Source: Paragordius varius | Taxonomy: Eukaryota > Animalia > Nematomorpha | Assembly: GCA_964247055.1 (NCBI GenBank) | Contig: OZ176052.1 | Location: forward strand, 4,154,001 to 4,218,000 | Length of the DNA stretch: 64,000 nucleotides | Reading direction: 5' to 3' | Shown: positions 12,001 through 41,200 of the stretch, piece after piece | Layout of the letters: every line of letters starts with the position of its first letter | Position numbering within the stretch: position 1 is the stretch's first letter | Made by a program: the position numbers and the translations under genes | The notes under the pieces: generated by a model | Databases searched by the model: none | What the model was told of the DNA's origin: nothing | Seen by the model: the letters and a program-made list of their open reading frames with translations, nothing else

Positions 12001-15000
12001 GCAAAATCTGTTTTTAGTTCATACCCAAAACAACCAACATACACTCTATTTATCCTGATACTGTTTCGTGGTAGTTTCGGTGACGGATGGATGGAAAATA
12101 GAATAATGGGAAAATCTGATAAGACAGCATAAATTTAACCAAGTCTAACATCAAACCGTCCGGCAAAATCTGTTTTTAGTTCATACCCAAAACAACCAAC
12201 ATACACTCTATCTATCCTGATACTGTTTCGTGGTAGTTTCGGTGACGGATGGATGGAAAATAGAATAAGTGGAAAATCTGATAAGACAGTTGCATCAATT
12301 TAACCAAGTCTAACATTCAACCGTCCGGCAAAATCTGTTTTTAGTTCATACCCAAAACAACCAACAACACTCTATCTATCCTGATACTGTTTCGTGGTAG
12401 TTTCGGTGACGGATGGATGCAAAATAGAATAATGGGAAAATCTGATAAGACAGTTGCATCAATTTAACCAAGTCTAACATTAAACCGTCCGGCAAAATCT
12501 GTTTTTAGTTCATACCCAAAACAACCAACATACACTCTATCTATCCTGATACTGTTTCGTGGTAGTTTCGGTGACGGATGGATGGAAAATAGAATAAGTG
12601 GAAAATCTGATAAGACAGTTGCATCAATTTAACCAAGTCTAACATTCAACCGTCCGGCAAAATCTGTTTTTAGTTCATACCCAAAACAACCAACAACACT
12701 CTATCTATCCTGATACTGTTTCGTGGTAGTTTCGGTGACGGATGGATGCAAAATAGAATAATGGGAAAATCTGATAAGACAGTTGCATCAATTTAACCAA
12801 GTCTAACATTAAACCGTCCGGCAAAATCTGTTTTTAGTTCATACCCAAAACAACCAACATACACTCTATCTATCCTGATACTGTTTCGTGGTAGTTTCGG
12901 TGACGGATGGATGGAAAATAGAATAAGTGGAAAATCTGATAAGACAGTTGCATCAATTTAACCAAGTCTAACATTCAACCGTCCGGCAAAATCTGTTTTT
13001 AGTTCATACCCAAAACAACCAACAACACTCTATCTATCCTGATACTGTTTCGTGGTAGTTTCGGTGACGGATGGATGCAAAATAGAATAATGGGAAAATC
13101 TGATAAGACAGGTGCATCAATTTAACCAAGTTTAACATTAAACCGTCCGGCAAAATCTGTTTTTAGTTCATACCCAAAACAACCAACATACACTCTATCT
13201 ATCCTGATACTGTTTCGTGGTAGTTTCGGTGACGGATGGATGGAAAATAGAATAAGTGGAAAATCTGATAAGACAGTTGCATCAATTTAACCAAGTCTAA
13301 CATTCAACCGTCCGGCAAAATCTGTTTTTAGTTCATACCCAAAACAACCAACAACACTCTATCTATCCTGATACTGTTTCGTGGTAGTTTCGGTGACGGA
13401 TGGATGCAAAATAGAATAATGGGAAAATCTGATAAGACAGTTGCATCAATTTAACCAAGTCTAACATTAAACCGTCCGGCAAAATCTGTTTTTAGTTCAT
13501 ACCCAAAACAACCTACATACACTCTATCTATCCTGATACTGTTTCGTGGTAGTTTCGGTGACGGATGGATGGAAAATAGAATAATGGGAAAATCTGATAA
13601 GACAGTTGCATCAATTTAACCAAGTCTAACATTAAACCGTCCGGCAAAATCTGTTTTTAGTTCATACCCAAAACAACCAACATACACTCTATCTATCCTG
13701 ATACTGTTTCGTGGTAGTTTCGGTGACGGATGGATGGAAAATAGAATAATGGGAAAATCTAATAAGACAGTTGCATTAATTAAGCCAAGTCTAACATCAG
13801 CCCGTCCGGCAAAATCTGTTTTTAGTTCATACCCAAAACAACCAACATACACTCTATCTATCCTGATTCTGTTTCGTGGTAGTTTCGGTGACGGATGGAT
13901 GGAAAATAGAATAATGGGAAAATCTGATAAGACAGTTGCATCAATTTACCCAAGTCTAACATTAAACCGTCCGGCAAAATCTGTTTTTAGTTCATACCCA
14001 AAACAACCAACATACACTCTATCTATCCTGATACTGTTTCGTGGTAGTTTCGGTGACGGATGGATGGAAAATAGAATAAGTGGAAAATCTGATAAGACAG
14101 TTGCATCAATTTAACCAAGTCTAACATTAAACCGTCCGGCAAAATCTGTTTTTAGTTCATACCCAAAACAACCAACATACACTCTATCTATCCTGATACT
14201 GTTTCGTGGTAGTTTCGGTGACGGATGGATGGAAAATAGAATAAGTGGAAAATCTGATAAGACAGTTGCATCAATTTAACCAAGTCTAACATTCAACCGT
14301 CCGGCAAAATCTGTTTTTAGTTCATACCCAAAACAACCAACAACACTCTATCTATCCTGATACTGTTTCGTGGTAGTTTCGGTGACGGATGGATGCAAAA
14401 TAGAATAATGGGAAAATCTGATAAGACAGTTGCATCAATTTAACCAAGTCTAACATTAAACCGTCCGGCAAAATCTGTTTTTAGTTCATACCCAAAACAA
14501 CCAACATACACTCTATCTATCCTGATACTGTTTCGTGGTAGTTTCGGTGACGGATGGATGGAAAATAGAATAAGTGGAAAATCTGATAAGACAGTTGCAT
14601 CAATTTAACCAAGTCTAACATTCAACCGTCCGGCAAAATCTGTTTTTAGTTCATACCCAAAACAACCAACAACACTCTATCTATCCTGATACTGTTTCGT
14701 GGTAGTTTCGGTGACGGATGGATGCAAAATAGAATAATGGGAAAATCTGATAAGACAGTTGCATCAATTTAACCAAGTTTAACATTAAACCGTCCGGCAA
14801 AATCTGTTTTTAGTTCATACCCAAAACAACCAACATACACTCTATCTATCCTGATACTGTTTCGTGGTAGTTTCGGTGACGGATGGATGGAAAATAGAAT
14901 AAGTGGAAAATCTGATAAGACAGTTGCATCAATTTAACCAAGTCTAACATTAAACCGTCCGGCAAAATCTGTTTTTAGTTCATACCCAAAACAACCAACA

Positions 15001-17334
15001 ACACTCTATCTATCCTGATACTGTTTCGTGGTAGTTTCGGTGACGGATGGATGCAAAATAGAATAATGGGAAAATCTGATAAGACAGTTGCATCAATTTA
15101 ACCAAGTCTAACATTAAACCGTCCGGCAAAATCTGTTTTTAGTTCATACCCAAAACAACCTACATACACTCTATCTATCCTGATACTGTTTCGTGGTAGT
15201 TTCGGTGACGGATGGATGGAAAATAGAATAATGGGAAAATCTGATAAGACAGTTGCATCAATTTAACCAAGTCTAACATTAAACCGTCCGGCAAAATCTG
15301 TTTTTAGTTCATACCCAAAACAACCAACATACACTCTATCTATCCTGATACTGTTTCGTGGTAGTTTCGGTGACGGATGGATGGAAAATAGAATAATGGG
15401 AAAATCTAATAAGACAGTTGCATTAATTAAGCCAAGTCTAACATCAGCCCGTCCGGCAAAATCTGTTTTTAGTTCATACCCAAAACAACCAACATACACT
15501 CTATCTATCCTGATTCTGTTTCGTGGTAGTTTCGGTGACGGATGGATGGAAAATAGAATAATGGGAAAATCTGATAAGACAGTTGCATCAATTTACCCAA
15601 GTCTAACATTAAACCATCCGGCAAAATCTGTTTTTAGTTCATACCCAAAACAACCAACATACACTCTATCTATCCTGATACTGTTTTCTGGTAGTTTCGG
15701 TGACGGATGGATGGAAAATAGAATAAGTGGAAAATCTGATAAGACAGTTGCATCAATTTAACCAAGTCTAACATTCAACCGTCCGGCAAAATCTGTTTTT
15801 AGTTCACACCCAAAACAACCAACATACACTCTATCTATCCTGATACTGTTTCGTGGTAGTTTCGGTGACGGATGGATGGAAAATAGAATAATGGGAAAAT
15901 CTGATAAGACAGTTGCATCAATTTAACCAAGTCTAACATTAAACCGTCCGGCAAAATCTGTTTTTAGTTCATACCCAAAACAACCAACATACACTCTATC
16001 TATCCTGATACTGTTTCGTGGTAGTTTCGGTGACGGATGGATGGAAAATAGAATAATGGGAAAATCTGATAAGACAGTTGCATCAATTTAACCAAGTCTA
16101 ACATTAAACCGTCCGGCAAAATCTGTTTTTGGTTCATACCCAAAACAACCAACATACATTCTATCTATCCTGATACTGTTTCGTGGTAGTTTCGGTGACG
16201 GATGGATGGAAAATAAATAATGGGAAAATTTGATAAGACAGTTGCATCAATTTAACCAAGTCTAACATCAAACCGTCCGGCAAAATCTGTTTTTAGTTCA
16301 TACCCAAAACAACCAACATACACTCTATCTATCCTGATACTGTTTCGTGGTAGTTTCGGTGACGGATGGATGGAAAATAGTATAATGGGAAAATCTGATA
16401 AGACAGTTGCATCAATTTAACCTAGTCTAACATTAAACCGTCCGGCAAAATCTGTTTTTAATTCATACCCAAAACAACCAACAACACTCTATCTATCCTG
16501 ATACTGTTTCGTGGTAGTTTCGGTGACGGATGGATGGAAAATAGAATAATGGGAAAATTTGATAAGACAGTTGCATCAATTTAACCAAGTCTAACATTAA
16601 ACCGTCCGGCAAAATCTCTTTTTAGTTCACACCCAAAACAACCAACATACACTCTATCTATCCTGATACTGTTTCGTGGTAGTTTCGGTGACGGATGGAT
16701 GTAAAATAGAATAATGGGAAAATCTGATAAGACAGTTGCATCAATTTAACCAAGTCTAACATTAAACCGTCCGGCAAAATCTGTTTTTAGTTCATACCCA
16801 AAACAACCAACATACACTCTATCTATCCTGATACTGTTTCGTGGTAGTTTCGGTGACGGATGGATGGAAAATAGAATAATGGGAAAATCTGATAAGACAG
16901 TTGCATCAATTTAACCAAGTCTAACATTAAACCGTCCGGCAAAATCTGTTTTTAGTTCATACCCAAAACAACCAACATACACTCTATCTATCCTGATACT
17001 GTTTCGTGGTAGTTTCGGTGACGGATGGATGGAAAATAGAATATGGGAAAATCTGATAAGACAGTTGCATTGATTTAGCCAAGTCTAACATTAAACGGTC
17101 CAGCAAAATCTGTTTCGAATTAGTTTACATCCAAAACAATCGACATACACTCTATCTATCCTTATACTGTTTCGTGGTGGTTTCGGTGACGGATGGATGG
17201 AAAATAGAATAATGGGAAAATCTAATAAGACAGTTGCATTGATTAAGCCAAGTCTAACATTAAACCGTCCAGAATAATCTGTTTCGAATTGATTCACATC
17301 CAAAACAACCGATATTTTATACTCTACCTATCCT
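1..17334. repeat. Tandem satellite DNA array, about 105 monomers of 165/164 bp (169 bp at edges), with higher-order repeats
   Basis: Unit acccaaaacaaccaacatacactctatctatcctgatactgtttcgtggtagtttcggtgacggatggatggaaaatagaataatgggaaaatctgataagacagttgcatcaatttaaccaagtctaacattaaaccgtccggcaaaatctgtttttagttcat recurs head-to-tail (e.g. starts at 1814 and 1979). It decays into unique AT-rich DNA at about 17334. No unique spacers, so not CRISPR. Confidence 0.98.
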
Positions 17335-19942: not shown

Positions 19943-22900
19943 TTAATGCGATGCTTTGTATACTTTCATGGCTTCATTGTATGCATCTTTGGCCCGTTGT
20001 GAAGCTTCTTCCCATTTCTTATAAAAAAATAAAAAAGTAAGTTTTTAAAATATGTGAAAAAATCAATAAGAACCGGTATCGTTTTTTTAAAACAAAAACG
20101 CTTTCGTAATTAGTGCTTTATTAAATATTTGTTAAAATTTTTGATGGAAGGAAAAATCATTCTTTATTTTTTCTAACTATATATATGAAATCATTCGATC
20201 TTGTCCTTAAAATTTGTTATGTTTTATCCGCAACGATCAATATTTAAAAAAATTAAAACGTTAAAATTTGACTGAAAAATAATGGAACTGGAAGCAAATT
20301 TATTTTGGCAAAAAGATTCTTTGAAAACAGAATCGTTTGAACAAAAAACCAATTTTTTACCAAAATAATTGGTTTTAAACCAGGACCTTGTTCTGATTCC
20401 TCAAAAATTATAACCAAAAAATTCGTATAAATACTGATTTATCTGTAATTTTTCTCCACTCCTCACCACCTAATTTGGTAATTTCCACAATGGATGCTTT
20501 AGGGTATTTTTGTTTAAGGGATTCTCTATTTTCTTGTAACCATAAAAAGTATGCCGTGAGTGGGCGTTTAGGCATATTGGGATCTCTATCTTTTTTATCC
20601 TTTTTATTCTAATATATATACACATTGTTAAAAAGCATAATTATAATTAATAAAATTATATTACAATAAAAATTGAAATTATACGGATACGTTAAATAAA
20701 GACAACTTTTTTTCAAAAGACAACCATACTTAATTAAACATTAATTTTTTCTATAAAAATTATATAATAACATTAAATACATATCTGATTGTGTTAATAT
20801 ACATTTCTATTACCTAGTTTGCAATTTCAAGCAATGAGTTTTTTAAAAAAATTAAAATTTAAAGAGTATGGTTATCTTTTAGCAAAAAATAGTTATTTTT
20901 AGGTATTGTCCCTATATCAATTTTTACTGTTTATATCGTATGATATTAAAATATTTTTGATAATAAAAAATTTTTTTATTCCAATTATGATATTAAAAAA
21001 ATATCGTAATCTTGGCAATCAATTATTAATAGTGTTATAGAAGAGTAATATATTAACTCATATCTCATACATAATTAACCATGAATTATTTCCAAAAATT
21101 ATAATTTTTACCGAATAAATACACATATGACAAAAACAATTTATACTTTATGTCCTGTGGTAATAATAGTTGCTAATTTCTTGTTTGGTGGAGGAGCTTT
21201 AACAGATTTTGATTCTTTATGATGATTATGATTATTAGGGTTTTTAGATTTTGTTGGCCCTTTAATATGGTCCTTTTCGCCCTGACTATCATCCTGAGTA
21301 TTTTCTCCAGATCCAGTTTGGTCCGAAGTTGATGAATGAGATCGTTTTTTAGCAGATGATTTTTTATTATCTTTCTGTTTTTTGGTTGCAACGCCATCTG
21401 AATCATCTCCGCTGTTATTACTGCTACTCTCAGCATTGCTATCGTACCTAAAATTTAAGTGGAAAAAAAATTCATTTCACATATGTAGTATAATAAAAAT
21501 TTGTGTTTTTTTTTTCGTGGTAAAAAAACTCCCGAATATATGTATTATATCATTAGTTATATGAGTAAAAAGTTTAAATTAAGATAATAAAACAAAAATG
21601 AAGGCTTGCCTTTAATCGACTATAACTGAAAAGTAGAGCCTTATTTCAAATACATAAAAATAATCAGGATGAGTACATAGCTTATAGAAACTGTTTAATT
21701 TAACAACCCATATAGATATGATAAAATTAATTTAGGTAATTTAATTCGATTACAAGATCAAAAGAACGCAATAGGCTCCATAAAAAGCTCTAAATTATTG
21801 TAAAAAAAGATACAGTCAGCTACGCTTTCTTTACTGCTCCTAAAAAAGGCATCCTTATTTAGCCTCCCACTTATAAAAGCAGGCCGTTTTAGTGAAAATA
21901 AAGCTTCTAACTTATAACCAAGAATCTACTTTTATCATACTTTTAATAACGCCAAAAAAGTTTAAACATTGTAAAGAAATACACTTCACGTACGCTCTCC
22001 TCACCACTCCCAGGCGTGGCAAATTTTTTAATTTAACTAAAGTTTAGAGTAACTTTTAACCAAGAATCTATATATTTTTAAAACTTCTAGTAATTCCCCC
22101 TGGACACCAAAATTTTCTAAAAAATTGTGACGAAAAATTAATCATCCACTACGCTCTCGTCACTGCCCCCACACGAAAAAAAAATCTTGGTTTTCCTAAT
22201 TAAAAGAGGATCTGTTGACACTCGCTTCATAATTAAAGTAACTGTCCACTATTATCGTGTCTTAAAAACAGAATCTTCCGATCATTTACGAAAAAAGGAA
22301 AATCATTTTTGATTACTCTAATACCACATGTTCCCTCACCATTTTCTTTTAGAGTGACAAATTTATCAATATTCCAGCATTCCCCCCTTTTTTTAATACG
22401 TTGTAATAAAGTAAAATGGTAACAAAAATTACTCTTTAGCTACGCTCTCGTCACTACCCCAAGACAAAAAAAATCTTGGATTTCCTAATTAAAAGAGGAT
22501 TGGTAAAAATTGCTTCATAGTTACAGTAACTGTCCACTATTACCGTGTCTTAAAAACAGAATCTCCCGATCATTAAACGAAAAAGGAAAAATAACCATAT
22601 TTGATTACTCTATTGCCACGTTTTCCCCATCACAACTTTTTTTTAAAGAGACAAATCCATCAAAATTATAGTACTACCCCCCCCCCCTTTTTAATACTTT
22701 GTAATACAATAAAATGGTGACAAAAATTACTCTTCAGCTACACTCTCGTCACTACCCCCAGATGAAAAAAATTCTTTGTTTTCCAATTAAAAAAGGCTTT
22801 GGTGACACTCTCTTCATAATTACAGTAACTGTCCACTATCAACGTGTCTTAAAACAGAATCTCCCCATCATTTTAAACGAAAAAGAAAAACCATATTTCA

Positions 22901-25085
22901 CTATTCTATTGCCATTTGTTCCTCACCACTTTCTCTGAGAGACACAAAGTCATTAATATTTCTCGAAAGATAAAAACCAGCCCCTTCCCGCTTTTTTAAT
23001 ACTTTGTAATAAAGGAAAATGGTCACAAAAATTACTCTTCAGCTACGCTCTCGTCACTACCCCCATTAAAAGAATGTTGACACTCGATTCATAATTACAC
23101 TAACTGTCCACTATTTTTTCCGCAAGATAAAAACAGAATCTCTCGATCATTTAACGAAAACCACACAACTCTATTGCCACGTTTTCCCCATTACCACTCA
23201 CTTTTAGAGCGACAAAGTCATTAATATTTCTCTTAAGATAAAAACCCTTTTTAATACTTTGTAACAAAAAATTACTCTTCAGCTACGCTCTCGTCACTAC
23301 CACCCCCAGGAGGGGCAAAGTCTTGGTCCTCCTCTTCACTATCCTCGTCTTCATAATCCATTGCTGAGGCGGCGGCATTCCCCGTCTTTGATGATTTGTG
23401 GCGTTTACGTTTTTCTCCTTCCTCTTCACTGAGTATTTCATCCTCATCAATGTCATCGTCAGCCATATCGTAATCGTTTGTGGTATCATTCGACTTGATT
23501 TTGTTTAATTATAATAATTATTGTAGAGAATAATTACAGCAGTAAAAATTAATACTATACAGACCATATACGTTAAAACGTAAAGACAAATATATGTTTC
23601 TAAAAGAGAACCATTTACTTTTTTTAACATTGATTTTTCCGATATAAACTATATAATCTATTGATTGTATTACCAATTAACATTTATATTCCTTAATATG
23701 CAAAAAAAGGTGAATATTTTTAAAAAACACTAGTTTAAAAAAGTACAGCGGTCTTTAGCAAATTATTTTTATTAATGTTTTTACTTTTTATCTGTATGAA
23801 TTTTAAATTTACTGTAAATTAATATATAATTAAAATATATTATTATTTAAAAAAATGCAGTAAATTAGTACCAATTTTCCACCAATATTTCGGACAACCA
23901 AATTCTTGGTCTTTATGAAATCAAAAAGGCTCGTATATTCTTCTCTATATATATTTAAATAAAAAAATATTCAGTAAGATAAAACTTTCTATCATGTTTA
24001 AATACAGAGAGATTCCTACAAATTTTCATCATTATTCGTTTAAAAACAAAATAGATTATATTTTGTATACAAGACCATATGCTTCATAATTACAAAACAA
24101 ATTGTTACAATTACTTATGGGAAGAGAAATAAAAAAATACAGATTAAAAATTTATTAATAATTAATTGTTTAAATATTGCAACTACACATCCTTAAAAAT
24201 GCCATCTATTTAAAATAGAGTATCAAATATAAAATTTAGGTAATATAGAGATATTTAAAGACAAACATACTGAAACAAATATAGTTAGTAAAATTGTCAG
24301 CATGATTCGTGAAAAAACCATGCGTTAACAATAATTATATTATTAGCAAACAAAGTCCTATTGCCAACTTTCCGCGTGGTTTGCTGGGGCATGAAAATGC
24401 GCTAATCATTAGTTGTACACAAGAATATGTGTTACGTAAAAATATCGCCTCAGATTACCAGGAGATATAAATATCATGAATATAAATTACTTCGTGAACC
24501 GAAAACTCGAATTTGGAGTCCCCCTTTATAATGATGATGATAATTAGTAAAAAAATTTAATTTCAAAAACAAGCTAAATTTATTACAAAAAAATCATGAA
24601 AATAATTTTTGTATACAGATCCACTAAAATGACCCCCTTCCCATAATGAACTTTCAAAATAGACAGGGTTTATAAAGAAATTAACTCATGCTGACAATGC
24701 CTTTTTCCGGTTTTAAAATAAGATTCCATTTTGTATCTTTCATAATGAACCAAAAACATAATATAAAAATCGAATTATTTTTAATATCCAGGCGAACTTA
24801 TTATTAAGGAACTGAGAAGATAAAATTTAATTTTGTAAATTATTTAAAAGGGTCATGATGTGGATAATAACCCATGTATTTTTACCACAATCGTAGTCAA
24901 TATGAAAGGAAGGGGTTAACTGTACCCAATTCGCATACAATACATATCCCTTATAAATGATTTAAAACACAGTTTTAGGTTCAAAATTAAAATGTTTCAT
25001 GGTTTACATAGATCATATAATAATTGAATTCCATATAAACTTTGCAACGTTAAAAGCGTTCAAGTCCAACGTTTTATAAAACAAT

Positions 25086-25130
<45 letters not shown>

Positions 25131-28100
25131 TATTAAATTTTTGTGACAAATCAAAAAAAACTTTGCAATGTTGGAAAAAGTGTGTTCGGTCCCAGCCTTA
25201 GTAGCCACTTCAAAATCAAACGTCTTAGTAGCCGGTCCAGATGAGCGGGCAAAATTAACCGAGGCCACTTCATCAAAGCGGATAGAGAGGGGCGGTTTAT
25301 GCACAAACACAAAACATCGCTCAAGCGGATATAGGTATCCGGCTCCAGCCTTATACGAACATGAGATGCAAGACGAAGCACCGTTATGACTATGTATTAA
25401 GTATGTACAATAAAAAAAGATTGAATTTTATGTTAATTAGCATAAAAATAGTTTTATTTAATGTATATGTAGGGTGTAAACTAAAATTAATTAACATAAT
25501 TAATCAATGTAGTATAGAATGGCATTTTTGAGCAAAAAGATAGTTAAAAACTTAAGTTAAATTATTAAAGTTTAGGATATTTTATTTTATAAAAACCTAT
25601 ATAAATAAACTGGCATTATTCCCATTATAAAAATTGATTTTTTTATATTACAAAGCCACCTTAACTAATTAGCTTCGGTAAATACAGTATTTATTGCCAA
25701 TATTTACCTTTTAAAACTTCCAGGTACTGTGATTTTATTACCAGATAGCGCTTTAATTAGGCGACTGAATACTTCAAATGATTTGCCAGTCATTACATCA
25801 GTCAATTTACCGTCATATTTTTCCTTAATTTCTTCCCTAAAATTAAAAAATAGCTAATTCAAATAAAATTTATCGAAAAATTCAAATTTATAAATTAAAA
25901 CATAAAAAGTAAAACACTTTATTATTTTTTTAAAAACCATATTTTTATAACTTAATTATCAAAATCTATTTAGAATTAATAAACTCTAAATTGAATGTGT
26001 TACAAAACTTCTCAAACCTTATTTCATATCACAAATTAATGAGTTATATTCAATAAATTTTGCATTAAAAAATTTTATTTTTATCTTTTTTATGTTAAAT
26101 CTTTTAAATTTAATTTTTATTACAAAAATTTATCTTATAGTTCAAAAAACATACTCAGTAAGTGATAACTTCATTGTGATTTCTTCGTCTTTTTCGAACA
26201 ATAAAATAAGGAAAGGGTAACGAGTTTGTCCTTGTTTAATTGGTGGATCAAGACTTATCTTTTTGCAGTTTTAAAAAATACTTAAAACATTTTAAAGGAA
26301 AATAATCATAAAAATGAATGTAATATATGATGCAATTTTTGATAAAAATTGATCTAACTATATAATTTTTATTAAATAATGATTTTGTAAACACATATTT
26401 AACTATAACCATAATAAAAATGGCCGAATTTACGGTAGATGTAATTATTAATTTTTATAACAATGTAATTTTGCAAAATTCAAATACAATTCCATAAATA
26501 ATAAATTTAAATCAATTTTTGCAACACCATATCAAAAACAATCATATGAAAATCTAACATAATATCACAATTACTTACGACAAAAAATATTTGTCTGTGA
26601 TCTTTATGGGGTAAAACAAACAATCGAAGTATGGTAGTATAGGCAATTTTATAATCAAAAGTTTTCCCATGAAGTTGAGCAAATGTTGGATACAATTTGA
26701 TATCGTATCTCCCACTAAAATATCACAAAAAATTTAAAATATCCATTTTTCGCAAACAAAAACCAAGCATAATTTTTTTATATAAACATTAAACTATAAT
26801 TTCGAAACATATCGATTAAGTGTGTTATGATTTTTTTCGTTATTTGGAAACGAACGAAATGTTCGAGTTAAATATATTAAAGTTTAACCTTTCTTTATCA
26901 ATGATTGTGTTTTTTTACGTTATGTCTTTATATTATCATTTACATAACAAAACGATAATATACCAAAATATGCAATAATTTACATTAATTTAAAATATGC
27001 AAACCAAATAATAAATAATTAGTCAAATTTACAAATTATCAGAGAAAACATAAATTAAATTTTTTTAAATAAAAAAATATTTATATACCGAGGTGTAAGG
27101 CATTGCGCTTCCGAAAACGTGGCAATAGCATCACCAGTAGCCTGAATTACATTGGCTTTTTCCATCACTTTTTTGTGGAGAGTCTATAAATATGACAGGA
27201 ACATAATGGCATTTAACTATTTTTGATTAAAAAATCATATTAAACAACATGTTTTAGGCAAAACATTAAGAAAAACTAGAAGACACACACAATTTTGTTT
27301 TAAATTATGAAAATTATTTAATAAAACCACCTGCCTAATTCAGTAAACCCTATTTACAAAAGTTCTCAATCGGTTAAATTAATTATAGATAAAGACAAAT
27401 TTAAAAATGATTAAAAATGCTTTATAGGATGTACCGCCATTTTAGTGAATCCCCTTACAAATGATTTTGATTATATGTTTCAAAGATATATTTTGATTAT
27501 CCTCTAAAGATAAGATTAAAATGCGCTTTAGGAGTTTGTTTGTTTGGACATAAAATATTGATTTTAACAATAAATTGCATGGATTAACAATAATTTGATA
27601 TTTTAATTTTCATCATTTGTTTGCCAAAACAGGGTTTGATTTAGACTATCATAAAATAATGAAATCTCACAAAATAGATATTAGATTATATTTATTTGGA
27701 TTCTGTCGCTTATACTCAGGATCATAAGTGCCTTCATCAATATATTAACAATAAGTGTTAGATTTATGACCAATCAATAAGAATATATATATATATATAT
27801 ATTTATCAATGCCATTTACGGTTATATTAATCATTATTACTAAATGTAAAAAGTTAACCCATTTTTTAATAAAAATAATATAATCCAAGTTTTATACCAT
27901 TGTTTTTTTTATTACCTAATAACCTATGTAGCGGGTAATTTAAATTACCGGTAACATCCAATCTATTCCATTTAAATAGGTATCAGAGCTTAAAATTAAG
28001 ACGAATTATAAGACCAATAAACTTATAACAAACCCTTCAAATAAAGCTTTTACACCTCATTACTAAAAAACGTGAGAAAAATCAAAATGTATGTACATAC

Positions 28101-30454
28101 ACAATTTTTATCCAAAACACAATACTATTCAAGAGGCAATATTTTTAGTTTCCAACGCAACAGTTTTAATTGAAAAAAAATTGTTACATTTAAATGAAAA
28201 ATTATGTTGTTTTATAGATAATATACACCATTTACAGTTCAAATTCACCCTTGAACAATTCAAATTCACCCATAAACAACTCAAATTCACCCTAAAATAA
28301 ATTAGGTGTTTTTTAAGATTAAATATTATCTATATTTTTTTATATTTTTTTAATAAAAAAATTTTGTATTTAATCAAAATAATACTCAAAAAATAATAAA
28401 CTTTGCAATAAAAATATATTTAAATTTTAATAATGAGTAATATTAGACCAAAACGTCATAATTTATTTTTAGGGTGAATTTGGATTGTTCAAGGGTGCTG
28501 AATTTGAATTGTAAATGGTATACATAAAACCCTTCTTTATAAAAATTCATATTTACAGTAACAGGGTCGTCCTGTTCATCAGAGGTACCTCCTGTCGTCC
28601 CACTAATAGAGGGGACAAAAAATCTCATCTCAACCAACGAGATAGGGGCATCATCATCCTGTTGAAATTCCATCGTTAGTTCATTTTTAGCCGTCGTGCA
28701 ATGACTAACGTAATTAAGGGGGATTTCAAAGCACGTCGTTCGGTTATAACTAATGTATTCCTCTTTACTCACGGGTAACTCGAATGAAAGCATAGACCCT
28801 AAAACAAAATTGAAAATAATAAAAATTAAACTGAAATATAACATATAAATGCAATATAACATTTAGATTAATTTTTGTTTATATTATAACATTATTTGAT
28901 TGAGTTACACAATTGTTCAATAAGAGTAAAATTAATTAATTTGTTGTTTCCTAAACTTTGGAAAAGCATCGTGAGAAGATTCGTTAAAAGAAAACTATGT
29001 ATTACATAATACAAATTAAAAATATAAAAATGAATAATATTATGGATTAAATAAAATGTCTGTGTGAAATGATAATAAGATATGTCAATAAAAATAAAAT
29101 TACATGTAAAGGCAAATATTTTTTAAAAAGAAAGCCAGTTATAACTTTAAATGTTGAATATAATCTTTGTGATAACATCTAATTTTATTTTAGTATTCAT
29201 AAGTAACATTTATTAAAATTAGGGTTTATTTGTCTTTTACTGAATACATCTAGGTATAGATCTTTACAGTGAATTTTAATGGTTGCTTATTTTACACTAA
29301 AGTTGGGCGATTGGCAACACAGTAGTGTATGGAAAAATGAAAAAAATGTTAAATAAACAATAATTTCCCTTCTTTTTTTTCCATATATTCCTGTGTTGCA
29401 TAATACCCTAATATAGTGTGAAATAAGCAGCCATTAAACATACTATAATTAGGTATCATTTTATGATTAAAGTAAAAATGTAATAAACTAAAACTGAGAA
29501 AATTTAATTTTATTTATAAATTAAATATTTATTTTATAAATGAAAATATATCAATCGGTTATTTATTTAAGTATTTATATATATGAATTGTACCATTTGA
29601 ACGCATTTATTTTTTGACACAAAAAATGAATCTTAATTTGATGCTCAAAGTTATTAGTTTAATTTTTTTGCATCCATTTAAGGTTAATAATACATATAAA
29701 AAATTAAGAAATGTATGTTAAGTTTCTTACTCAAACTTATCTGAACCATTTAGTTTGAAACAAATTTTGAAACTAAATAACTGATTGCAATTTGGGTGTT
29801 TATTAAATAAATTTTTTTTTGCATATAATTTAAATAAAATTATTGGGAAAATATTTTTTAAAATCAACCTAAATTTTAAAAATATTTACTCACAAAAAAT
29901 TATTGCGTTAAACCAAAATTTTTTATCGAAACTGACCTTTTGGGGTTTTTGACGAAATTTTAAATTTGATTATCGATATTGATTAAGACTAGTGTATTAT
30001 TAAAAATACCCTTTTTAAAATTTCAAAATTTAAAGAAACATACTACCTTCAAAAATAGGTAATCCCCAATTATGACCCTTAACCGTATAATGTGCATCAC
30101 GCAATGTTAGGCTATAATTTTTGGAAAGATAATTTTGTACATTATCATAATCCTATCGTTATAACATAATATACTAATTTTGTAAATCCTGAGTATCTAT
30201 GAAAAATTCCGCCTGTAGTTTCAATACATAGACCAGGTCCATTTGCAAATTCAATCCATGATAAACTACCAATATCAGAAGGAACAAAATGATCCAATTT
30301 TCCCGTTTTACTATTTTTGAAAAAGATTCCATTTATTTGAAATTTCATTCTCCCAGGATTCTATAAATTTAGAAAACATATTATTTACCATAACACCCCT
30401 TATCTCCTCAAACAAATTATTATATTCAAGTACATTTGAATCGGTGTTAGTCAT
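19943..30454 (-). CDS. SSRP1: FACT complex subunit SSRP1 (about 710 aa, 14 coding exons)
   Basis: Exons in transcript order: 30454-30389, 30360-30175, 30152-30047, 28798-28557, 27183-27089, 26714-26579, 26258-26155, 25836-25708, 25389-25162, 23944-23872, 23493-23276, 21447-21147, 20608-20435, 20017-19943. All introns are GT-AG with matching phases; total 2133 nt. Hallmark motifs: [83 protein letters not shown], an acidic region and an HMG box ([15 protein letters not shown]). An alternative in-frame ATG lies at 30463. Confidence 0.96.
22130..23310 (-). repeat. Diverged tandem repeat (units about 240-300 bp) containing the SSRP1 exon 11 end and its donor site
   Basis: Motif aattactcttcagctacgctctcgtcactacccc at about 23271 (true exon end), 23031, 22725 and 22427, degenerate at about 22140. 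The intervening intron sequence (taactgtccacta, aaaacagaatct) also repeats. Confidence 0.88.
25086..25126. repeat. Compound (AC)n(TA)15 microsatellite in SSRP1 intron 9
   Basis: Direct reading. Confidence 0.9.
28222..28523. mobile_element. Foldback/MITE-like element with modular inverted arms, copy A (SSRP1 intron 4)
   Basis: Left arm 28222-28304 (ccatttac, then 3x caaattcaccc at 21-bp spacing, then taaaataaatta) is inverted relative to 28459-28523, with an AT-rich spacer. No TSD established. Confidence 0.6.
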
Positions 30455-30690
30455 TTGAACCATGTTAGTAAATGAATGAATAAATTTTGATTTTCAAAAA
30501 TTAAATAAGGCGCCAAGGTTTTGATTTTACTTAACACGTTAAAAGTCCATTAAAGTTTTATTAGTTGTTTGATTTTTATATATTATATTTTTATTTCAAT
30601 AATACACTAATCTAACCAGAAACAGCTCGCATCCCTAGTGCTTCAGTCTGTTTATCCAGTTTAAGATTTTTTTTACAAGTTCATGATATA

Positions 30691-30938
30691 TGTACCATTT
30701 ACAATTTATTGAACATTCAAATTGACCCTAAAAATAAATTATATATTATCGGGAACCCATCATTAATATAAATTATATCTATATTGCATATATTATTTTT
30801 TCAGTATTATTTAATTTTAATAAAATTTTAAAAATATCAAAAATCAAAGTAATTTTTAACTTTAAAAGCCACTTAATTTATTTTGAGTTAATTTGAATTG
30901 TTCGAGGGTGAATTTAAATTGTTCAAAAAAATGGTATA
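30691..30938. mobile_element. Foldback/MITE-like element, copy B (upstream of SSRP1)
   Basis: Same arm motifs as copy A (taccatttaca...caaattgaccctaaaaataaatta and taattta...agggtgaattt...aaatggtata), more diverged. Confidence 0.5.
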
Positions 30939-31629
30939 TTATAATAGCCATACTAAACAAGACCTAAAAACTGGTTTATTAAAATAATATATTATTTTTA
31001 AATGGTAAAAAGATTTATGCAGTAAACCTATTCGGCTGAACACAGTCACGGTTTAAATTTTTTAATATGAAACTTATTTTAATTAAACCTTGTCGAATTT
31101 TAATTAAAAGTTTTTTATACAATGAAAATGGTCAATGCTAATTTAACTGCCTCTGCCCTTATTAAACCTAAAGTAAGTAAGTTACCTGAATATGGCAAAG
31201 ATTTTATAAAAAATTTTAATTTCCATTTTCATATTTATTAAACGATTCTATGCCAACAATAATAATGCCCAAGCAAATATTTTAGATGCAAAAATCCATT
31301 CCAATCTCAAACCTGTAATCCTGGCACAAAACAATTAAATATAACTAAAAAAATATAATGCGAAAAATAGTATACGATTACCTTAAAATGGTTTTTTCTA
31401 GATAAATGCATAATTTCCAGTAATATACATAGTTATATTAATCAGTACACGATGATTATATTTGTAACCTTAACTGTATCATTAGAAACAACAGCCATTA
31501 GGCAATGAACTTAATTTTGATATTATTAAATATTGTTCATAAACACTTATATAAATAAAAAACCGTATATCTTATAATTTATATAGCTCCTGTTTAGAGT
31601 TTAAAATTTATACAAATTTACAAATAAAT

Positions 31630-34600
31630 TTATTCGATTTTCATCTTTTTTGGTTCATAACTATCATCTTGATCATTATCAATATGAATAGTTTGTGAAG
31701 CATTTGAAACATCAAATTTAGGCGTAAAAGATGGAATTTGCATTTCGTGTTCTAAATTTTTGGCATCCTGCTTGGCATTTTCAATTGTTTGAACGAAAAG
31801 ATTAATGAAATATTCAACAGAACAATGGGTATCATCATTAGCGGGGATTGGGTATGTTATATATCTAATAAATAATACAAATTTTAATAGATAATTTATT
31901 GTCTTTCTTTCCAGTTCAGTTCATCAAAACTTTCGGTTCCAATTTTACTTTTGAAATAGTTAATAATTAAAATCTATATTTTAAAAATTCGAATATTTAT
32001 TATGGCTTTAAACTCACAAAAGCCCATAATTCGGATCCAAACGGTTGCGGGTTCAATCCCTGACTGAATCATTTTAGAGCATAAGCACCACTGACAAATA
32101 ATAGATAGAAATAAATAAATTAAAAAAATAATTAATTGAACAATTTTAATTATTTAATGTTAAAAAGATATAATTGATTAAAACTGTTGCATACCTTTCC
32201 CATTCTTAAAATCTCATGTTAGTGTATGAAATTTTGTTTGATTTTTATAAACTAATAACCTGATAAATAAAGCAAATGCCTTCAATGACATTATGTTTTA
32301 TTTGGGGAAAAAATATATTATGGTCATGTTATTTAACGTAATGTGTAATCACAATCTGGATTGCGTTTATTGAAAATATTAATAACATTATTTAATTAAT
32401 TATCAATTATTAAAGTTGTATTTAAACGCTCTTCTAACTCATAACAATATTAAATTGCGGTTTATAAATAAATTGGTTTAAATATTTGTAAGTTTTTAAT
32501 TTTTAAATTTTTCAAAAAATAATTATACCCATTAACTTCCATTACCATTAGCCAGTATTATTATAATAAGAACTACTACTATAAAAAAATTAAATATTAA
32601 TCATGTAAATGAAATAATATAAATCGGTATCATAATATAATTATATACAATATTCACCAGATATCACACCCATATCCTACAAAATTAACTATAATCCTGA
32701 AAATTATTATTACATAAAACAGCTGACGCCAAAGGCGAATAAATAGTCTAAAATATCAAATATTTGCCCAACTATCATCGACACCCTTTCCGACACTTTG
32801 GTGAATAAAATAAAACCTATACGAACTCTTTATGTCAAACCTTATATCCACACACCAAATTATAGTAGCGCCCCTTAATAAATAAATTCTTCCGTATTGT
32901 ATTTCTAAAACAGAGCCTATAAATTTAGTTCATCTATTATTCATCATGCAATATTCCGATTTTTAATTGGGCGTACTTTCTTACACACTTTAACTAATTT
33001 CGGCATTTTTTATCCTTTTTAGTTTTTAGGAAAAGAGTCATGCTACGAATATTAAGTCATATATTATCCCACAATCGGGGCGATAACTACGGAGAAAATT
33101 AATTTGTTATAGTATGTATACTTACTCAGTTGAGCAATTAGTATCGACCAAAGCTATGCTTGGTATATTGGAGATTGCACAATCCCGTATAGCTGCATGT
33201 TGACGTTGTAACGTATCTTGACTGTGAAAGAAAATACAGAGATCGGGTAGCCGTATTTCCTCCTCTTGTAATACTACGAGTTTGGCTGTTTCATCTGCAT
33301 TGCGGAGTTCGGGAGATTCCAACAGCAATTGGTTTACGGATAGATCATTCCTTTACACAGACAGTTATAGAGTAGAATAAATAAATTTATTCTTTCAAAA
33401 AAATTTCTAAAATATTTTATAACTTAAATTTATCATATAATAGGCTATTTTAATGAAATTATTTTTTAAAAAATGGTTTTTAATAATTTTTTTAAAGAAC
33501 TACACTTTTATCTTTTTAAGCGTGAAAAATTCATTCAAAAAACATTACTTTTTCTTTAAAGCAAAAAAATGTTGTTTTTATAAATAGAGATGATACCTGG
33601 CATAAAATTTGTTGGCATTCAGAAAATTTCCCCTGGCCCACAACCTACAATGCGCATAAACTCCGGCATCGATTGCAGCCTTCTCCACTTTGTGTACGAA
33701 TTGAGGATATCGACATAGGAAAAGAATGATTCCTGATATATGAAACTAGATTAAACTATCAATATTTAAAAACATTTTTTTATGAATAATAAAATAGGTT
33801 ATATATACAGTTAATAAAAATAAATTTAGAAATGCACCTAATAGCAATCATTATCAGTGTCAATACAACAAACAATTATATATTACATTTTATAAGGCTT
33901 TCTTATAAACTGTAACAACATTTATTATATGTTCCGTATGTATTAAATGTAAAAAATAACCCTATTCGATTTTTCGTAAATTTTTATAAAATTATATTTT
34001 TGAAAAATATGCAACTATGCAGACAAAATATTTAAATAATAATCCAATTTATTTTTTCACATTTCATATAATGTGTACGAAGAATTTTTTAGGAAAATTT
34101 TCAAAGGATGATTTTTGTATAAATTATTTGCTAATATGAATTATAAGAATTTTTATAATTAATATATTTTATTATAAAAATATAAGGGTTATATGATTAC
34201 ACAAAAAATCGAAATATTATAATACATAACATATTCATAAAATATAAGCTAACAAAATCAAAAAACAGGCTAAGCTGTAAGTAAGGTAAAACTATTGAAT
34301 TTTATTTTCCTGAAAATTAAATTTAAACAAAATTTACTTGTTTGTCAATTATTGAATCAGGCCACAAAAAAATAGTACTTCAGGCATATAATTAACATAA
34401 GACAATAATTATGATTTACAAAAAGTATTATCCAATAATGAACGCAATCTTATATAAAATAATGAGTATTATAAGTTTGTCATTAGCAATGTATGAAATG
34501 AAAATATTGTTACCTTGACGTAAAGCAATCTCATATGTAACTTCTAAGGCTCGTTTCAAATGCGATACAGTATGGTCCAAATCAATGATATGCATGCCAA

Positions 34601-34748
34601 CACGGTCCCCATATAAATATGGTACCATATCTTGATGAATTAACTCCTTTTTATGCCCCATATACACCCGAGAATTAAATAACTCCTCCATTGAGTATTC
34701 AGGGATGCAAATATTTGACAATTTTCGAAATAAGATTCGAAAAACCAT
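31630..34748 (-). CDS. MRPS2: Mitochondrial small ribosomal subunit protein uS2m (about 276 aa, 4 coding exons)
   Basis: Exons 34748-34514, 33732-33597, 33350-33126 and 31864-31630; GT-AG, phases match, 831 nt. Motifs: ELFNSRVYMGH, PYLYGDR...IIDLDHT, RLPDLCIF, AIRDCAISNIPSIALVDTNC, ITYPIPANDD. The R/K-rich, acid-free N-terminus resembles a mitochondrial presequence. The start codon is less certain, because an AG 2 nt upstream could mark a further 5' exon. Confidence 0.92.
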
Positions 34749-35081
34749 GCCTATATATGTATGAACAAGAACAATGTGCCAATATTTTGTGGATTGTGCG
34801 GATCCGCACCAATTATATAATATGATAATAAAGAAACAGATTGTTTTGTTTTCAGACAGGTTAATCGAATTCGTAATATATAATGAAGACTTTACCATAA
34901 AAATACATTTTTTTATAAAAACATTCCATATAAATATCCAATTTATATAAAATAATGCCAAATTTATGACTAATTTGAATATAAATCATTATATAACAAA
35001 ATAAATATGTTTTTTGTGAATTCTAGTACCATTGCCCCACAAAAATGGCTTCGCGGGCCGCATTCGCAAAGTATATGGTAA

Positions 35082-38220: not shown

Positions 38221-41200
38221 ATGTATCCCTTTACCGATCGTAAATTCTTTATACCACTCTACATGATTGAATTGGTTATAATAATTTTGACAAACAGTTA
38301 CCTAATATACCTTATTCGTAATGACAGAGGTAGTAAACGCAATTTTTCATACAGTGTCCGATGCTTTTTTGGGTTACGCGCTTTTGGTGACTTATTCTTT
38401 GGTCTTGTATGTATCCCATTACACATTTACATCTCTTTTTTTAGTCCGACATTACATGTAACGACACAAGATGAGGAGAAAAGGATGTTGTTTGCTTTAC
38501 CAGCTTGTCGTAGGTTAGGCGCTCTGTGGTATCTAGAAGAAGCTGGAATTTATATAAGCTCCTACACAATCCTAGCGATTGCCATTAACCGATATCAAGC
38601 TATCCGTAAACCTTTTAAAATAATCACTGTAATATCCCAACAAAGCAAAAGACACGGTTGGCATCTCCGATTAAATAATAATCAACAAACATTAATTATT
38701 TATAACTATTGCGTTATTCTGGCAATCACTTTGCTGGCGCCAATCCCATTTTTGGTAGTGAGACTTCGTCACACTAATCCCGCAAATTTTTGCGTTTATA
38801 CACATAAACAATTCCTTAATCATCTCACCTATCTAATTGTTTTGGGTTAGTCAAATTATAGTAATAACAATACATTATGCTAGTGTTCAATTTTAAATTT
38901 CAGATTGAATTTGGCAATACCATGGCAGATGTGGTATTATATAATCTGCTAACATGGTTATAATAAAAATATGATACATTTTAACTGTAAATGTTTGAAT
39001 TTCATTTCAATTGGTCCGATTAATAAAAAATTTACAGTTATAAAATTGTAAAGCAATATTTTATAACTAAATGCATCATTGATTTGGCATATTCATTTTT
39101 CTGCGATCTAGAATCCAAATATCTGCCTAGTCATGAAATAATATTCCATGCATTTGTAGCATGGTGAAACTAGGAATTTAGGATAATGGATGTTTAATAT
39201 ATTACTTTTGACACTTTCAAATTAATTAAATTGGGAAAGATGCGTGGGCCTAATGTTATAAATGATATTATATGTCTATATATTACTCTAAAAATTAAAA
39301 CATTAGGAAAGTCTATTAGTTAAAACTAATTAAAAACCAATAAAATGCAGATTTGAAATTAGTTCTCTTTGATCATTTATTTTATAATTAGATCAAATAT
39401 TAGTGATAATATAAATTATGAATTAGAAGGGTGCTACTTTGCTATTTATATTAAAATGATAACCATTAAAAAACTTATATTAAAATCTTAAATATATTGC
39501 AGTATCAATTGTAAGTCAACTTGTTTATACCAGGTGTACTCATAAATTTTTACTGGTTTTTTGGTAAATAAACACGTAAATGTTATTCATAATATTGTTA
39601 TTCAGAATAATGTTAATCAGCTTATACGCATTAGACCCGCTCGAGTATTATATGAAGATCATGCTTGAAATGTTGACTTTTGCGGTAAACCGCTCGTCAC
39701 GCCATTTCGAACATCTTCGAAATTATTGAAGTGCTGCTCTACGAGCGTGTGCCAAATTGATGCGAGGTGATAGTCAGATAGCGTTAGGTCATGGCAGGAC
39801 TGCGGATAGGGAAAAATTTTAAAAAAGAATTTAAGTTGTCTTTTGATGATTGCTCTGTGTAAGACGGAATCATGTAATGAAAACTTTGCCATGTCTTCTA
39901 ACCCAACCCGGTCAATTTTCGATTAATGGGTTTGGGGATAGCGTTGGGCATTAACGGTTTCACTGGGCTTTAAAAGTCTATAATACAATAACGCTCTGGA
40001 TCCAATAGACACAGATTATAGTCTTTTTGCCAAAGCCATTTGGCCTTGATGTGGATGGACCAGTTGGCAATAATAAAAACCACGATGTTTTATGCCTTTT
40101 ACAAAAAATCCCACTTCTCATTACACTTCACATCGATGCAAAAATGATTTACTTACGTCAAGCAGGATTTCGCTTTGCGATTTTCGGTTCTTAGGATCTA
40201 TTTACCGAGTTCATTAGCCTTTTCCATTGCTCGTAAACGTCCACTGATTGGCTTTTACCTAAACGATGCTGATAAAATAAGAAAAACGCCACAATCTTTT
40301 TTTCAGGCACTCGACATGATTACTGAATGATAAAAATAAGCTAGTTTTGCTGGATTTAACATGTGTGTGGTCGTTTAATGTAGTGGGGTTTTGTCAAATT
40401 ATCGTCTGCATACTTTATGACGTTTTTTCTTAGTCAAATCGATATTGACTTATGTCTTCACTGTTAGACTTTTCTTACTGGTCATATAATTTGTTGTAAA
40501 AAATTAATCGGGATTGCCGATACCATAGCTTTTTTGAAACCATTTTGAATACCAAATTTTTTTAAAACCTCAATAATTATTTGCATTTTATATATTTGGA
40601 TTCTTGTAATATTAAGCTATCTGCAAATTTAAGAACCGGGTGTTAAAACAAATATTTATTTTTATATTACTAATATTAAAGCTACTCCGCTAAAATTAAA
40701 TTTCATATTTTTTTATTTTCTTATAATTTAGAAAAACCTGAAAATACAGTCTAATATCTTTTTCTGGTAAACACGGAATTAATTTTTTATGAATTCATCA
40801 TTGGTCATTATATATATGTGAAAAATCTTTTAGGCCATTATATTTGGCATAATATTAATTCAACACTTTTAACATGCCGAATTCATTAATTTAAAATATT
40901 ACTTTTCTGTTTATACAGATAAGATAAAAAAATCAATTACAAAAAGAAGGAACGGGCTAACTCAAAAAATATACCTGCACAATAATATGATATTTTAACA
41001 TTAATTTGATTTTTTAAATAAAAAGGTATAGCCATACCCTACATATCATCTATAATCCTATACACACTGATAATTCGTTTTATCCGCAGCTCTAGTAATT
41101 TAATACTACACACCACACCTGAATCAAATCAGATATCAGCACAAGGCCTACTGAATTCCGCTGTATCGGAGAAAAGAAAATCACGTTCCATTGTATTAAT

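What the first reader, a model, noticed from the sequence alone, without database searches (positions are those of the whole stretch)
30153..30174. 22-nt spliceosomal intron required in SSRP1
Seen: the - strand intron GTATATTATGTTATAACGATAG (22 nt). Retention gives ...[14 protein letters not shown] (stop). Removal gives YSGFTKL|[13 protein letters not shown], which aligns without gaps to human YDGFRES-EFEKLSDFFKTHY (recalled) and continues into VKGHNWG. Established: most animal introns exceed about 40-70 nt; introns this short are known mainly from ciliates, chlorarachniophyte nucleomorphs and dicyemids. Here it coexists with 0.3-1.8 kb introns in the same gene. Inference: an animal spliceosome able to excise about 22-nt introns without genome-wide intron miniaturisation. 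This is the strongest candidate for an undescribed system in the window.
Basis: partly seen in the sequence, partly recalled or inferred. Interest (0 to 1): 0.78.

Follow-up and report, generated by a model that had tools for sequence, protein, structure and literature searches.

The report
Real 22-base intron in hairworm SSRP1
A 22-base stretch in the only SSRP1 gene of this AT-rich, hairworm-type genome is almost certainly a real, extremely small intron, lying where a nematode has a 151-base intron; introns under 30 bases are published for only two other animal groups, but no RNA could be examined.

Summary
On the minus strand, 30174-30153 is a 22-nt GT...AG segment. Keeping it ends the SSRP1 frame at a stop. 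Removing it joins ...YSGFTKL to DYDNVQNY... with no gap against human SSRP1 and two full-length homologues. The only other canonical pair that restores the frame is an implausible 13-nt one.

A second tiny intron of 28 nt lies 186 nt upstream. The first three intron positions and phases match Trichinella SSRP1 exactly (53/151/50 nt there, 28/22/1248 nt here). The genome has one SSRP1 N-domain copy, so this is not a pseudogene beside an intact copy.

In eight CCT chaperonin genes of the same genome I found eight more GT-AG introns of 23-29 nt. All lie in the first ~70 codons, ahead of 380-710-nt introns. U1 and U2 snRNAs have canonical recognition sequences.

So this is a real U2-type micro-intron of a 5'-clustered class. 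The scan noted the same class many times elsewhere in this genome. Sub-30-nt animal introns are published only for myxobolid myxozoans and Dicyema. 5'-clustered microintrons of about 37 nt beside kb introns are published for flatworms.

I found no report for hairworms. No RNA evidence was reachable, so excision is inferred.

The parts
30389..30463 (-). SSRP1 exon 1 (25 codons from the ATG at 30463)
   Evidence: Translation. tblastn of P0009 residues 2-17 maps to 30436-30389.
30361..30388 (-). Intron 1, 28 nt, GTAAAT...TATAG, phase 0
   Evidence: Sequence. The junction gives EEIRGVM|NPGRMKF with no gap against P0009. Trichinella has a 53-nt intron at the same site.
30175..30360 (-). SSRP1 exon 2 (62 codons), N-terminal PH domain
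   Evidence: Matches human SSRP1 residues 19-78 at E=1e-8. Matches Pfam POB3_N positions 13-73 of 93 at 46 bits.
30153..30174 (-). Intron 2, the finding: 22 nt, GTATAT...GATAG, phase 0. Candidate branch site TTATAAC, with the branch A 16 nt from the 5' end and 6 nt from the 3' end.
   Evidence: Searches give the sequence and show it is the only plausible frame-restoring GT-AG pair. One search shows the gapless junction. One search shows a 151-nt Trichinella intron at the same codon boundary.
30047..30152 (-). SSRP1 exon 3 (35 codons plus 1 nt)
   Evidence: Translation. tblastn of P0009 and P0024 residues 80-118 maps here. On its own it is too short to be significant against PDB or Pfam.
28799..30046 (-). 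Intron 3, 1248 nt, phase 1
   Evidence: Junction [13 protein letters not shown]. Trichinella has a 50-nt intron at the same position and phase.
28557..28798 (-). SSRP1 exon 4 (SSrecog domain)
   Evidence: Matches human SSRP1 residues 127-169 at E=6e-13. Matches Pfam SSrecog at 57 bits.
20435..28556 (-). Rest of the gene: exons 5 onward with introns of 1373, 374, 320, 318, 318 and 1217 nt and more, down to the HMG box at 20581-20435
   Evidence: tblastn HSPs and junctions.

Best explanation
30174-30153 (minus strand) is a genuine U2-type GT-AG spliceosomal intron of 22 nt in the single SSRP1 (FACT subunit) gene of a hairworm-type (Nematomorpha) genome. It is an ancestral intron shared in position and phase with the nematode Trichinella, and it has shrunk to near the working minimum. 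It belongs to a class of 22-29-nt, very AT-rich introns (consensus 5' GTAWWT, 3' TTTAG or TATAG) that cluster in the first ~70 codons of genes, while downstream introns of the same genes are 0.3-1.4 kb. Inferred mechanism: recognition across the intron by a canonical U1 and U2. The branch adenosine would sit about 16-19 nt from the 5' splice site and only 5-11 nt from the 3' AG, which sets a floor near 22 nt. Shown here: the sequence, the frame logic, the homology, the conserved intron positions, the class in other genes, and canonical snRNAs. Inferred: actual excision in RNA, the branch point, and the size floor.
For: (1) The sequence and frames are as described.
(2) The junction is gapless against human SSRP1 and against homologues P0009 and P0024.
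(3) Only two canonical GT..AG pairs restore the frame, 22 nt and 13 nt. The acceptor is forced, because the exon-3 frame opens directly after the TAG at 30155-30153.
(4) The first three introns match Trichinella SSRP1 (L001) in position and phase: 53, 151 and 50 nt there against 28, 22 and 1248 nt here.
(5) A second tiny intron of 28 nt lies in the same gene.
(6) G000 has only one SSRP1 N-domain locus.
(7) Eight more GT-AG introns of 23-29 nt lie at the 5' ends of five of eight CCT genes. Each gives a seamless conserved chaperonin motif. They have 11-21% GC. Both in-frame ones carry stop codons.
(8) The donor GTATAT is also used by longer introns here: SSRP1 intron 5 and CCT introns of 57 and 84 nt.
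(9) U2 keeps the GUAGUA branch-binding box and U1 keeps ACUUACCUG.
(10) Chance estimate is about 0.002-0.016 per junction.
Against: No RNA or cDNA for this gene could be reached. The word search with exon 2 was blank. The representative search with exon 4 found no same-species or close-relative protein; the best match, by E-value, was a Trichinella protein at 46% identity, and no match exceeded 68%. Raw reads could not be examined, so an extra G at 30153/30152 in the assembly plus a 7-residue insertion is not formally excluded. Exon 3 alone is not significant against PDB or Pfam. The 5' site GUAUAU pairs weakly with U1. The proposed branch A lies only 6 nt from the 3' AG, closer than in model organisms.
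Confidence: 0.85

Rival explanations
1. Assembly error: one extra base (for example in the GG at 30153/30152) breaks a continuous exon. The true protein would carry a lineage-specific 7-residue insertion (VYYVITI) at this point.
For: 22 = 21 + 1, so deleting one G at the 3' edge would give an open frame (frames). Raw reads could not be checked.
Against: The segment starts with this genome's usual donor GTATAT and ends in AG. It lies exactly at an intron position shared with Trichinella. It has 23% GC against 31% in the flanking exons. The same frame-breaking pattern recurs 186 nt upstream and in five CCT genes. There is no long homopolymer of the kind where indel errors concentrate.
Confidence: 0.04
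2. The gene copy is a decaying pseudogene and the frame break is a real mutation, not an intron.
For: A frame shift with a downstream stop is what a pseudogene would show.
Against: It is the only SSRP1 N-domain locus in the 110.6-Mb assembly. All other exons found are open and conserved, through the HMG box and the exon after it. FACT is essential in eukaryotes (established knowledge).
Confidence: 0.02
3. Splicing uses the inner donor at 30165, giving a 13-nt intron and a 3-residue insertion (VYY).
For: It is the only other canonical pair that restores the frame.
Against: 13 nt is below any spliceosomal intron I know of (15 nt in some ciliates, from my own knowledge). Its donor GTTATA fits the local consensus less well. 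It introduces a gap against all homologues.
Confidence: 0.02
4. The segment is removed by a non-spliceosomal route: IRE1/tRNA-ligase-type cytoplasmic splicing as for the 26-nt XBP1 intron, DNA elimination, or translational bypass.
For: The size resembles the XBP1/HAC1-type intron.
Against: The boundaries are GT-AG, not the CNG|NNG loop motif. The position is that of an ordinary intron in Trichinella. Ten such segments in unrelated housekeeping genes share splice-site-like ends. U1 and U2 are canonical.
Confidence: 0.02

Closest known systems
Ultra-short introns of myxobolid Myxozoa (median 22-27 bp) and Dicyema japonicum (PMC13644364, Mol Biol Evol 2026)
   Same: They are animal GT-AG introns under 30 nt. 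22 nt equals the shortest published median. U2 is canonical. There is no polypyrimidine tract to speak of. A-rich residues lie at a roughly fixed distance from the 5' end, so they move away from the AG as the intron lengthens. I see AA at about position 16-19 in all ten examples here except one 23-nt CCT intron (sequences).
   Different: In those lineages nearly all introns are tiny and the genomes are reduced. Here the tiny ones are confined to the 5' ends, and the same genes carry 0.3-1.4-kb introns rich in repeats. The lineage is an ecdysozoan worm, which that paper's text does not name.
Flatworm microintrons (Opisthorchis felineus and other trematodes, cestodes and monogeneans; PMC6530080)
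   Same: There are two classes of intron length. The microintrons lie preferentially near the transcription start and cluster together, beside kb-sized introns. Annotation software with a high minimum intron length under-calls them.
   Different: The flatworm peaks are at about 37 and 90 bp. Here the class spans 22-29 nt, below the 30-nt limit. The phylum is different.
Orthologous intron 2 of Trichinella SSRP1 (GCA_001447755.1, JYDO01000247; L001 6297-6447)
   Same: It has the same codon boundary and phase, and so do both neighbouring introns.
   Different: It is 151 nt with a GTAAGT donor. The public gene model places a dubious 27-nt mini-exon inside it and duplicates the N-terminal half of the protein.
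Tiny introns of ciliates and chlorarachniophyte nucleomorphs (my own knowledge; ciliates also cited in PMC5014332 and PMC13644364)
   Same: The size range is 15-30 nt. In-frame members tend to carry stop codons; both in-frame examples here do.
   Different: Those are protists with uniformly tiny introns. This is an animal with mixed intron sizes.

Membership tests
U2-type GT-AG spliceosomal intron | GT at the 5' end and AG at the 3' end | tested here: met
   GTATAT...GATAG at 30174-30153.
U2-type GT-AG spliceosomal intron | Removal restores the reading frame and the alignment to orthologues | tested here: met
   The junction is gapless against human SSRP1, P0009 and P0024.
U2-type GT-AG spliceosomal intron | Position and phase shared with an intron in another species | tested here: met
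   Trichinella has a 151-nt intron at KDS|DFDR, phase 0. The flanking introns also match.
U2-type GT-AG spliceosomal intron | Branch site able to pair with U2 | tested here: inconclusive
   TTATAAC matches 5 of 7 positions of UACUAAC, but the branch A would be only 6 nt from the AG. U2's GUAGUA box is intact. The branch point was not mapped.
U2-type GT-AG spliceosomal intron | Excision seen in mature RNA | not testable with these tools
   No transcript-derived protein or contig for this gene could be found.
Sub-30-nt animal introns of the dicyemid/myxobolid kind | Length under 30 nt | tested here: met
   22 nt. Nine others are 23-29 nt.
Sub-30-nt animal introns of the dicyemid/myxobolid kind | Miniaturisation of nearly all introns (median under 30 nt) | tested here: not met
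   SSRP1 introns 3-9 are 318-1373 nt. Downstream introns of the best-covered CCT gene are about 380-710 nt.
Flatworm-type microintron architecture | Microintrons clustered near the gene start, beside long introns | tested here: met
   SSRP1 introns 1-2 and the CCT tiny introns all lie within the first ~70 codons (87 in SSRP1). The sample is small: 9 genes.
Flatworm-type microintron architecture | Length peak near 37 bp | tested here: not met
   The range here is 22-29 nt, with a few of 57-84 nt at comparable sites.
SSRP1 / Pob3 (FACT subunit) | POB3_N PH domain, SSrecog domain, Rtt106-like middle domain and HMG box, in that order | tested here: met
   Pfam finds POB3_N on exon 2 and SSrecog on exon 4. 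tblastn HSPs of full-length SSRP1 homologues cover residues 2-430 and the HMG box at 20581-20435. PDB hits are to human SSRP1.
Nematomorpha (source organism) | Long perfect palindromes in the mitochondrial genome (PMC6649704) | tested here: met
   The mitochondrial contig C44 near cox1 has spacer-free palindromes with arms of 131 nt (95% complementary) and 97 nt (99%), and arrays of 52-nt hairpins that are 98-100% complementary. I did not check whether they lie inside coding genes. The species was not determined.

The most novel reading that the evidence does not exclude
Hairworms would be a third animal lineage with spliceosomal introns under 30 nt, and the first in which they form a position-dependent class. 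Ancestral introns in the first ~70 codons would have been squeezed to a floor of about 22 nt, set by a ~16-nt distance from the 5' splice site to the branch point. Introns further down the same genes would have grown to kilobases by repeat insertion. Common gene finders and aligners use minimum intron lengths of about 20-40 nt (my own knowledge). Part of the low BUSCO completeness (71.6% in Gordionus) and of the reported 'rampant loss of universal genes' in Nematomorpha could therefore be an annotation artefact.
Probability: 0.4. Interest if true: 0.72.

Novelty: new variant of a known kind. Interest (0 to 1): 0.6.

Why it matters
If RNA confirms it, a free-living-stage ecdysozoan worm with a 110-Mb, repeat-rich genome removes 22-nt introns using an apparently ordinary U1/U2 machinery. 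That would separate extreme intron shortening from genome reduction, the setting in which it has been described in dicyemids and myxozoans. It would also provide a natural system in which tiny and kilobase introns are processed in the same transcript. That is useful for asking what sets the minimum intron length and why 5'-proximal introns behave differently.

There is a practical side too. Such introns are easily missed or treated as frameshifts by standard annotation. Gene-loss claims for this phylum should be rechecked with a lower minimum intron length.

Tried and rejected
(1) RNA or cDNA evidence. The word search with exon 2 was blank. The representative search with exon 4 returned no same-species or hairworm protein. 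The short top hits P0002 and P0003 turned out to be marine metagenome contigs.

(2) Reaching full-length transcript proteins through a long stop-free reference. None exists in the CCT loci.

(3) A wider survey of about 400 kb flanking the window.

(4) A homology-free scan for frame-restoring GT..AG pairs between open frames of 30 or more codons. It was too noisy to give a length distribution, so I replaced it with curated junctions in CCT genes.

(5) Exon 3 alone against PDB and Pfam. It was not significant because it is only 35 residues long.

(6) A third, in-frame 30-nt intron in exon 4. Considered and left open (see noticed in passing).

(7) IRE1-type intron, DNA elimination and the 13-nt intron. 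All considered and rejected (see rivals).

Exons were searched one by one by reference. Only short anchor peptides of about 15 residues were joined inside local scripts, to test frames.

Full report
OBSERVATION

The minus strand at 30174-30153 reads GTATATTATGTTATAACGATAG, 22 nt, exactly as reported. Upstream, the open frame 30360-30175 encodes 62 residues ending YSGFTKL. If read on, it gives VYYVITIGL and then a stop. Downstream, a different frame opens at 30152, directly after the TAG at 30155-30153. It encodes [35 protein letters not shown].

WHAT THE GENE IS

Exon 2 matches human SSRP1 residues 19-78 (E=1e-8) and Pfam POB3_N positions 13-73 of 93 (46 bits). Exon 4 (28798-28557) matches human SSRP1 residues 127-169 (E=6e-13) and Pfam SSrecog. 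A search of 1.84 billion representative proteins with exon 4 returned SSRP1 proteins.

I aligned two full-length homologues from that search, P0009 and P0024, to the window with tblastn. They trace the gene on the minus strand from 30436 down to the HMG box at 20581-20435, with a further weak match at 20014-19949. Junction analysis gives introns of 28, 22, 1248, 1373, 374, 320, 318, 318 and 1217 nt. This confirms that the tiny introns sit alongside long ones. The whole assembly (G000, 110.6 Mb, 44 contigs) has a single POB3_N locus, and it is this one.

IS THE 22-NT SEGMENT AN INTRON?

(a) Frame logic. The acceptor is forced, because the exon-3 frame is closed by TAG immediately upstream of 30152, and the next AG downstream would delete conserved residues. 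Only two GT donors restore the frame, giving 22 nt or 13 nt.

(b) Homology. For both homologues, residue 78 maps to 30178 and residue 80 to 30152. One residue remains for the one codon between them (30177-30175), so there is no gap. Against human SSRP1, exon 2 ends at about residue 80. The spacing to the exon-4 match is also gapless up to a separate 10-residue excess inside exon 4.

(c) Conserved position. The best hit, P0001, is a Trichinella gene model (GCA_001447755.1, JYDO01000247). In its DNA (L001) the first three introns lie at GFL|NPGK (53 nt, phase 0), KDS|DFDR (151 nt, phase 0) and within the G codon of IG|SVLEF (50 nt, phase 1). These are the same three positions and phases as the 28-, 22- and 1248-nt introns here. 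The public Trichinella model inserts a 27-nt mini-exon (LYICIAILD) into the second intron, and this is what first drew my attention to the shared site.

(d) A second case in the same gene. 30388-30361 is a 28-nt GTAAAT...TATAG segment whose removal gives EEIRGVM|NPGRMKF, gapless against P0009.

(e) Chance. With local GT and AG frequencies of 0.047 and 0.039, a canonical pair at exact boundaries has a probability of about 0.002, or 0.016 with one codon of slack. This happens twice in this gene, and at sites that carry introns in Trichinella.

THE CLASS IN THIS GENOME (my own small survey)

A six-frame search for the chaperonin family PF00118 found eight CCT-type genes plus HSP60; the 5' end of one of the CCT-type genes (on C7 near 4.73 Mb) was not among the loci I held, so the eight genes read at their 5' ends are seven CCT-type genes and HSP60. 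Reading their 5' ends and solving the junctions gave GT-AG introns as follows:
- 25 and 26 nt in L037
- 23 and 23 nt in L012
- 24 nt in L014
- 27 and 28 nt in L021
- 29 nt in L024

Each restores a textbook CCT N-terminal motif, for example PRGMDKM|I..., DIRSQN|VTA... and GPRAMLK|MLMDPVGG. All lie within the first ~70 codons. Two other CCT genes have introns of 57-84 nt at comparable sites, and the downstream introns of the best-covered CCT gene are about 380-710 nt.

The ten tiny introns, including the two in SSRP1, share several features:
- a 5' consensus of GTAWWT
- a 3' end of TTTAG, TATAG or similar
- 11-23% GC, against 31-43% in the SSRP1 exons
- an AA or AAA run about 16-19 nt from the 5' end (positions 12-13 in one of the two 23-nt L012 introns)

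Both in-frame members carry stop codons. The donor GTATAT of the 22-nt intron is also used by longer introns.

MACHINERY

The best U2 copy keeps the GUAGUA branch-binding box. The best U1 keeps ACUUACCUG at its 5' end. U12 gave only a sub-threshold match of 34 bits against a cut-off of 53. So nothing in the snRNA cores points to an unusual spliceosome. The published myxozoan study reached the same conclusion for U2 and for the U2AF1 and U2AF2 proteins (PMC13644364).

My mechanistic reading is an inference. I propose recognition across the intron, with a roughly fixed distance of ~16 nt from the 5' site to the branch, and a very short tail of 5-11 nt from the branch to the AG. For the 22-nt intron the candidate branch site is TTATAAC, with the A at position 16, 6 nt from the 3' end.

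SOURCE ORGANISM

Several observations point to a hairworm:
- GC is about 25% and the window is repeat-rich.
- The best SSRP1 match is a nematode.
- The mitochondrial contig has spacer-free, near-perfect palindromes with arms up to 131 nt (95% and 99% complementary). This is the published hallmark of Nematomorpha (PMC6649704).
- The published Gordionus genome has 26.9% GC and 64% repeats.

The species was not determined.

COMPARISON WITH WHAT IS KNOWN

A September 2026 survey of 51 animal genomes states that introns under 30 bp occur only in myxobolid myxozoans (median 22-27 bp) and Dicyema japonicum. Its text does not mention Nematomorpha. The two hairworm genome preprints I could read never use the word 'intron'. 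Combined searches for Nematomorpha with intron-length terms surfaced no relevant paper. The Current Biology paper on hairworm gene loss is not in the library, so I could not check it.

The two-class layout is published for flatworms: microintrons near the gene start, clustered, beside kb introns. There the peaks are at 37 and 90 bp (PMC6530080).

So this finding combines the size class of dicyemids and myxozoans with the layout of flatworms, in a new phylum. I call it a new variant of a known kind, not a categorically new system.

EARLIER NOTES OF THIS SCAN

Searches show that the same class was noted many times in other windows of this genome. They also pointed me to the hairworm identity, which I then tested on the mitochondrial contig. 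One note reports RNA support for a neighbouring gene elsewhere, which I could not test.

LIMITS

- No RNA and no raw reads were available.
Exons were handled one by one by reference. Only ~15-residue anchors were joined inside local scripts, to test frames.

VERDICT

The 22-nt segment is a real micro-intron with about 85% confidence. The novelty claim is trimmed.

Noticed in passing
window 28750-28779 (minus strand), inside SSRP1 exon 4: An in-frame, stop-free 30-nt GT...AG segment (GTTACC...CATTAG). Removing it would turn a 10-residue excess ([10 protein letters not shown]) into a gapless [13 protein letters not shown] against all homologues. It has 40% GC, like exon sequence and unlike the tiny introns. 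It could be a coding insertion or a third micro-intron; this is undecided.
   Followed up: partly
window 22121-23065, and copies at 22432-22455, 22730-22753 and 23035-23058 (minus strand): The intron after the acidic exon ending near 23277 contains a 298-nt tandem repeat (3.2 copies, 80% matches). Each unit carries a copy of at least the last 24 nt of that exon ([10 protein letters not shown]); whether the copies also carry the GTAATT donor that straddles the exon end was not checked.
   Followed up: partly
window 1-17284: A 165-bp satellite array with about 105 copies and 96% matches fills the first quarter of the window. It explains the flat 37% GC there.
   Followed up: no
G000 C3:257000-527000, and C2:11.95-11.99 Mb: U2 snRNA gives 46 matches, 35 over the Rfam cut-off. 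Many are degenerate copies clustered in a few regions. U1 likewise clusters on C6:565-633 kb. These may be snRNA variant arrays or pseudogenes.
   Followed up: no
G000 C5:10606517-10606667: The only U12 snRNA candidate scores 34 bits, below the 53-bit cut-off. The minor spliceosome may be lost or highly diverged, as in nematodes.
   Followed up: no
L001 6001-8830 (Trichinella, JYDO01000247): The public SSRP1 gene model P0001 duplicates the N-terminal 260 residues. It also places a 27-nt mini-exon (LYICIAILD) inside what reads as a single 151-nt intron. This is probably an annotation or assembly artefact.
   Followed up: partly
L007 53-314, 770-1472 and 4064-4257 (mitochondrial contig C44): Spacer-free palindromes with arms of 131 nt (95% complementary) and 97 nt (99%), and a tandem array of 52-nt hairpin units that are 98-100% complementary, lie next to cox1. 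They match the hairpin-rich mitochondrial DNA published for hairworms.
   Followed up: partly
window 50400-58500 (+), 38221-38850 (+), 44174-45621 (-) and 33100-34960 (-): Other genes in the window are a many-exon collagen (Gly-X-Y ORFs), two paralogous 7TM-receptor-like genes on opposite strands, and a mitochondrial ribosomal protein S2-like gene. I did not examine them for tiny introns.
   Followed up: no
window 28234-28297, 28470-28540 and 30862-30960: A 21-nt unit (ACAATTCAAATTCACCCTTAA, translating as FKFTLEQ...) recurs in tandem and dispersed in SSRP1 introns and upstream of the gene. It is probably part of a small repeat element.
   Followed up: no
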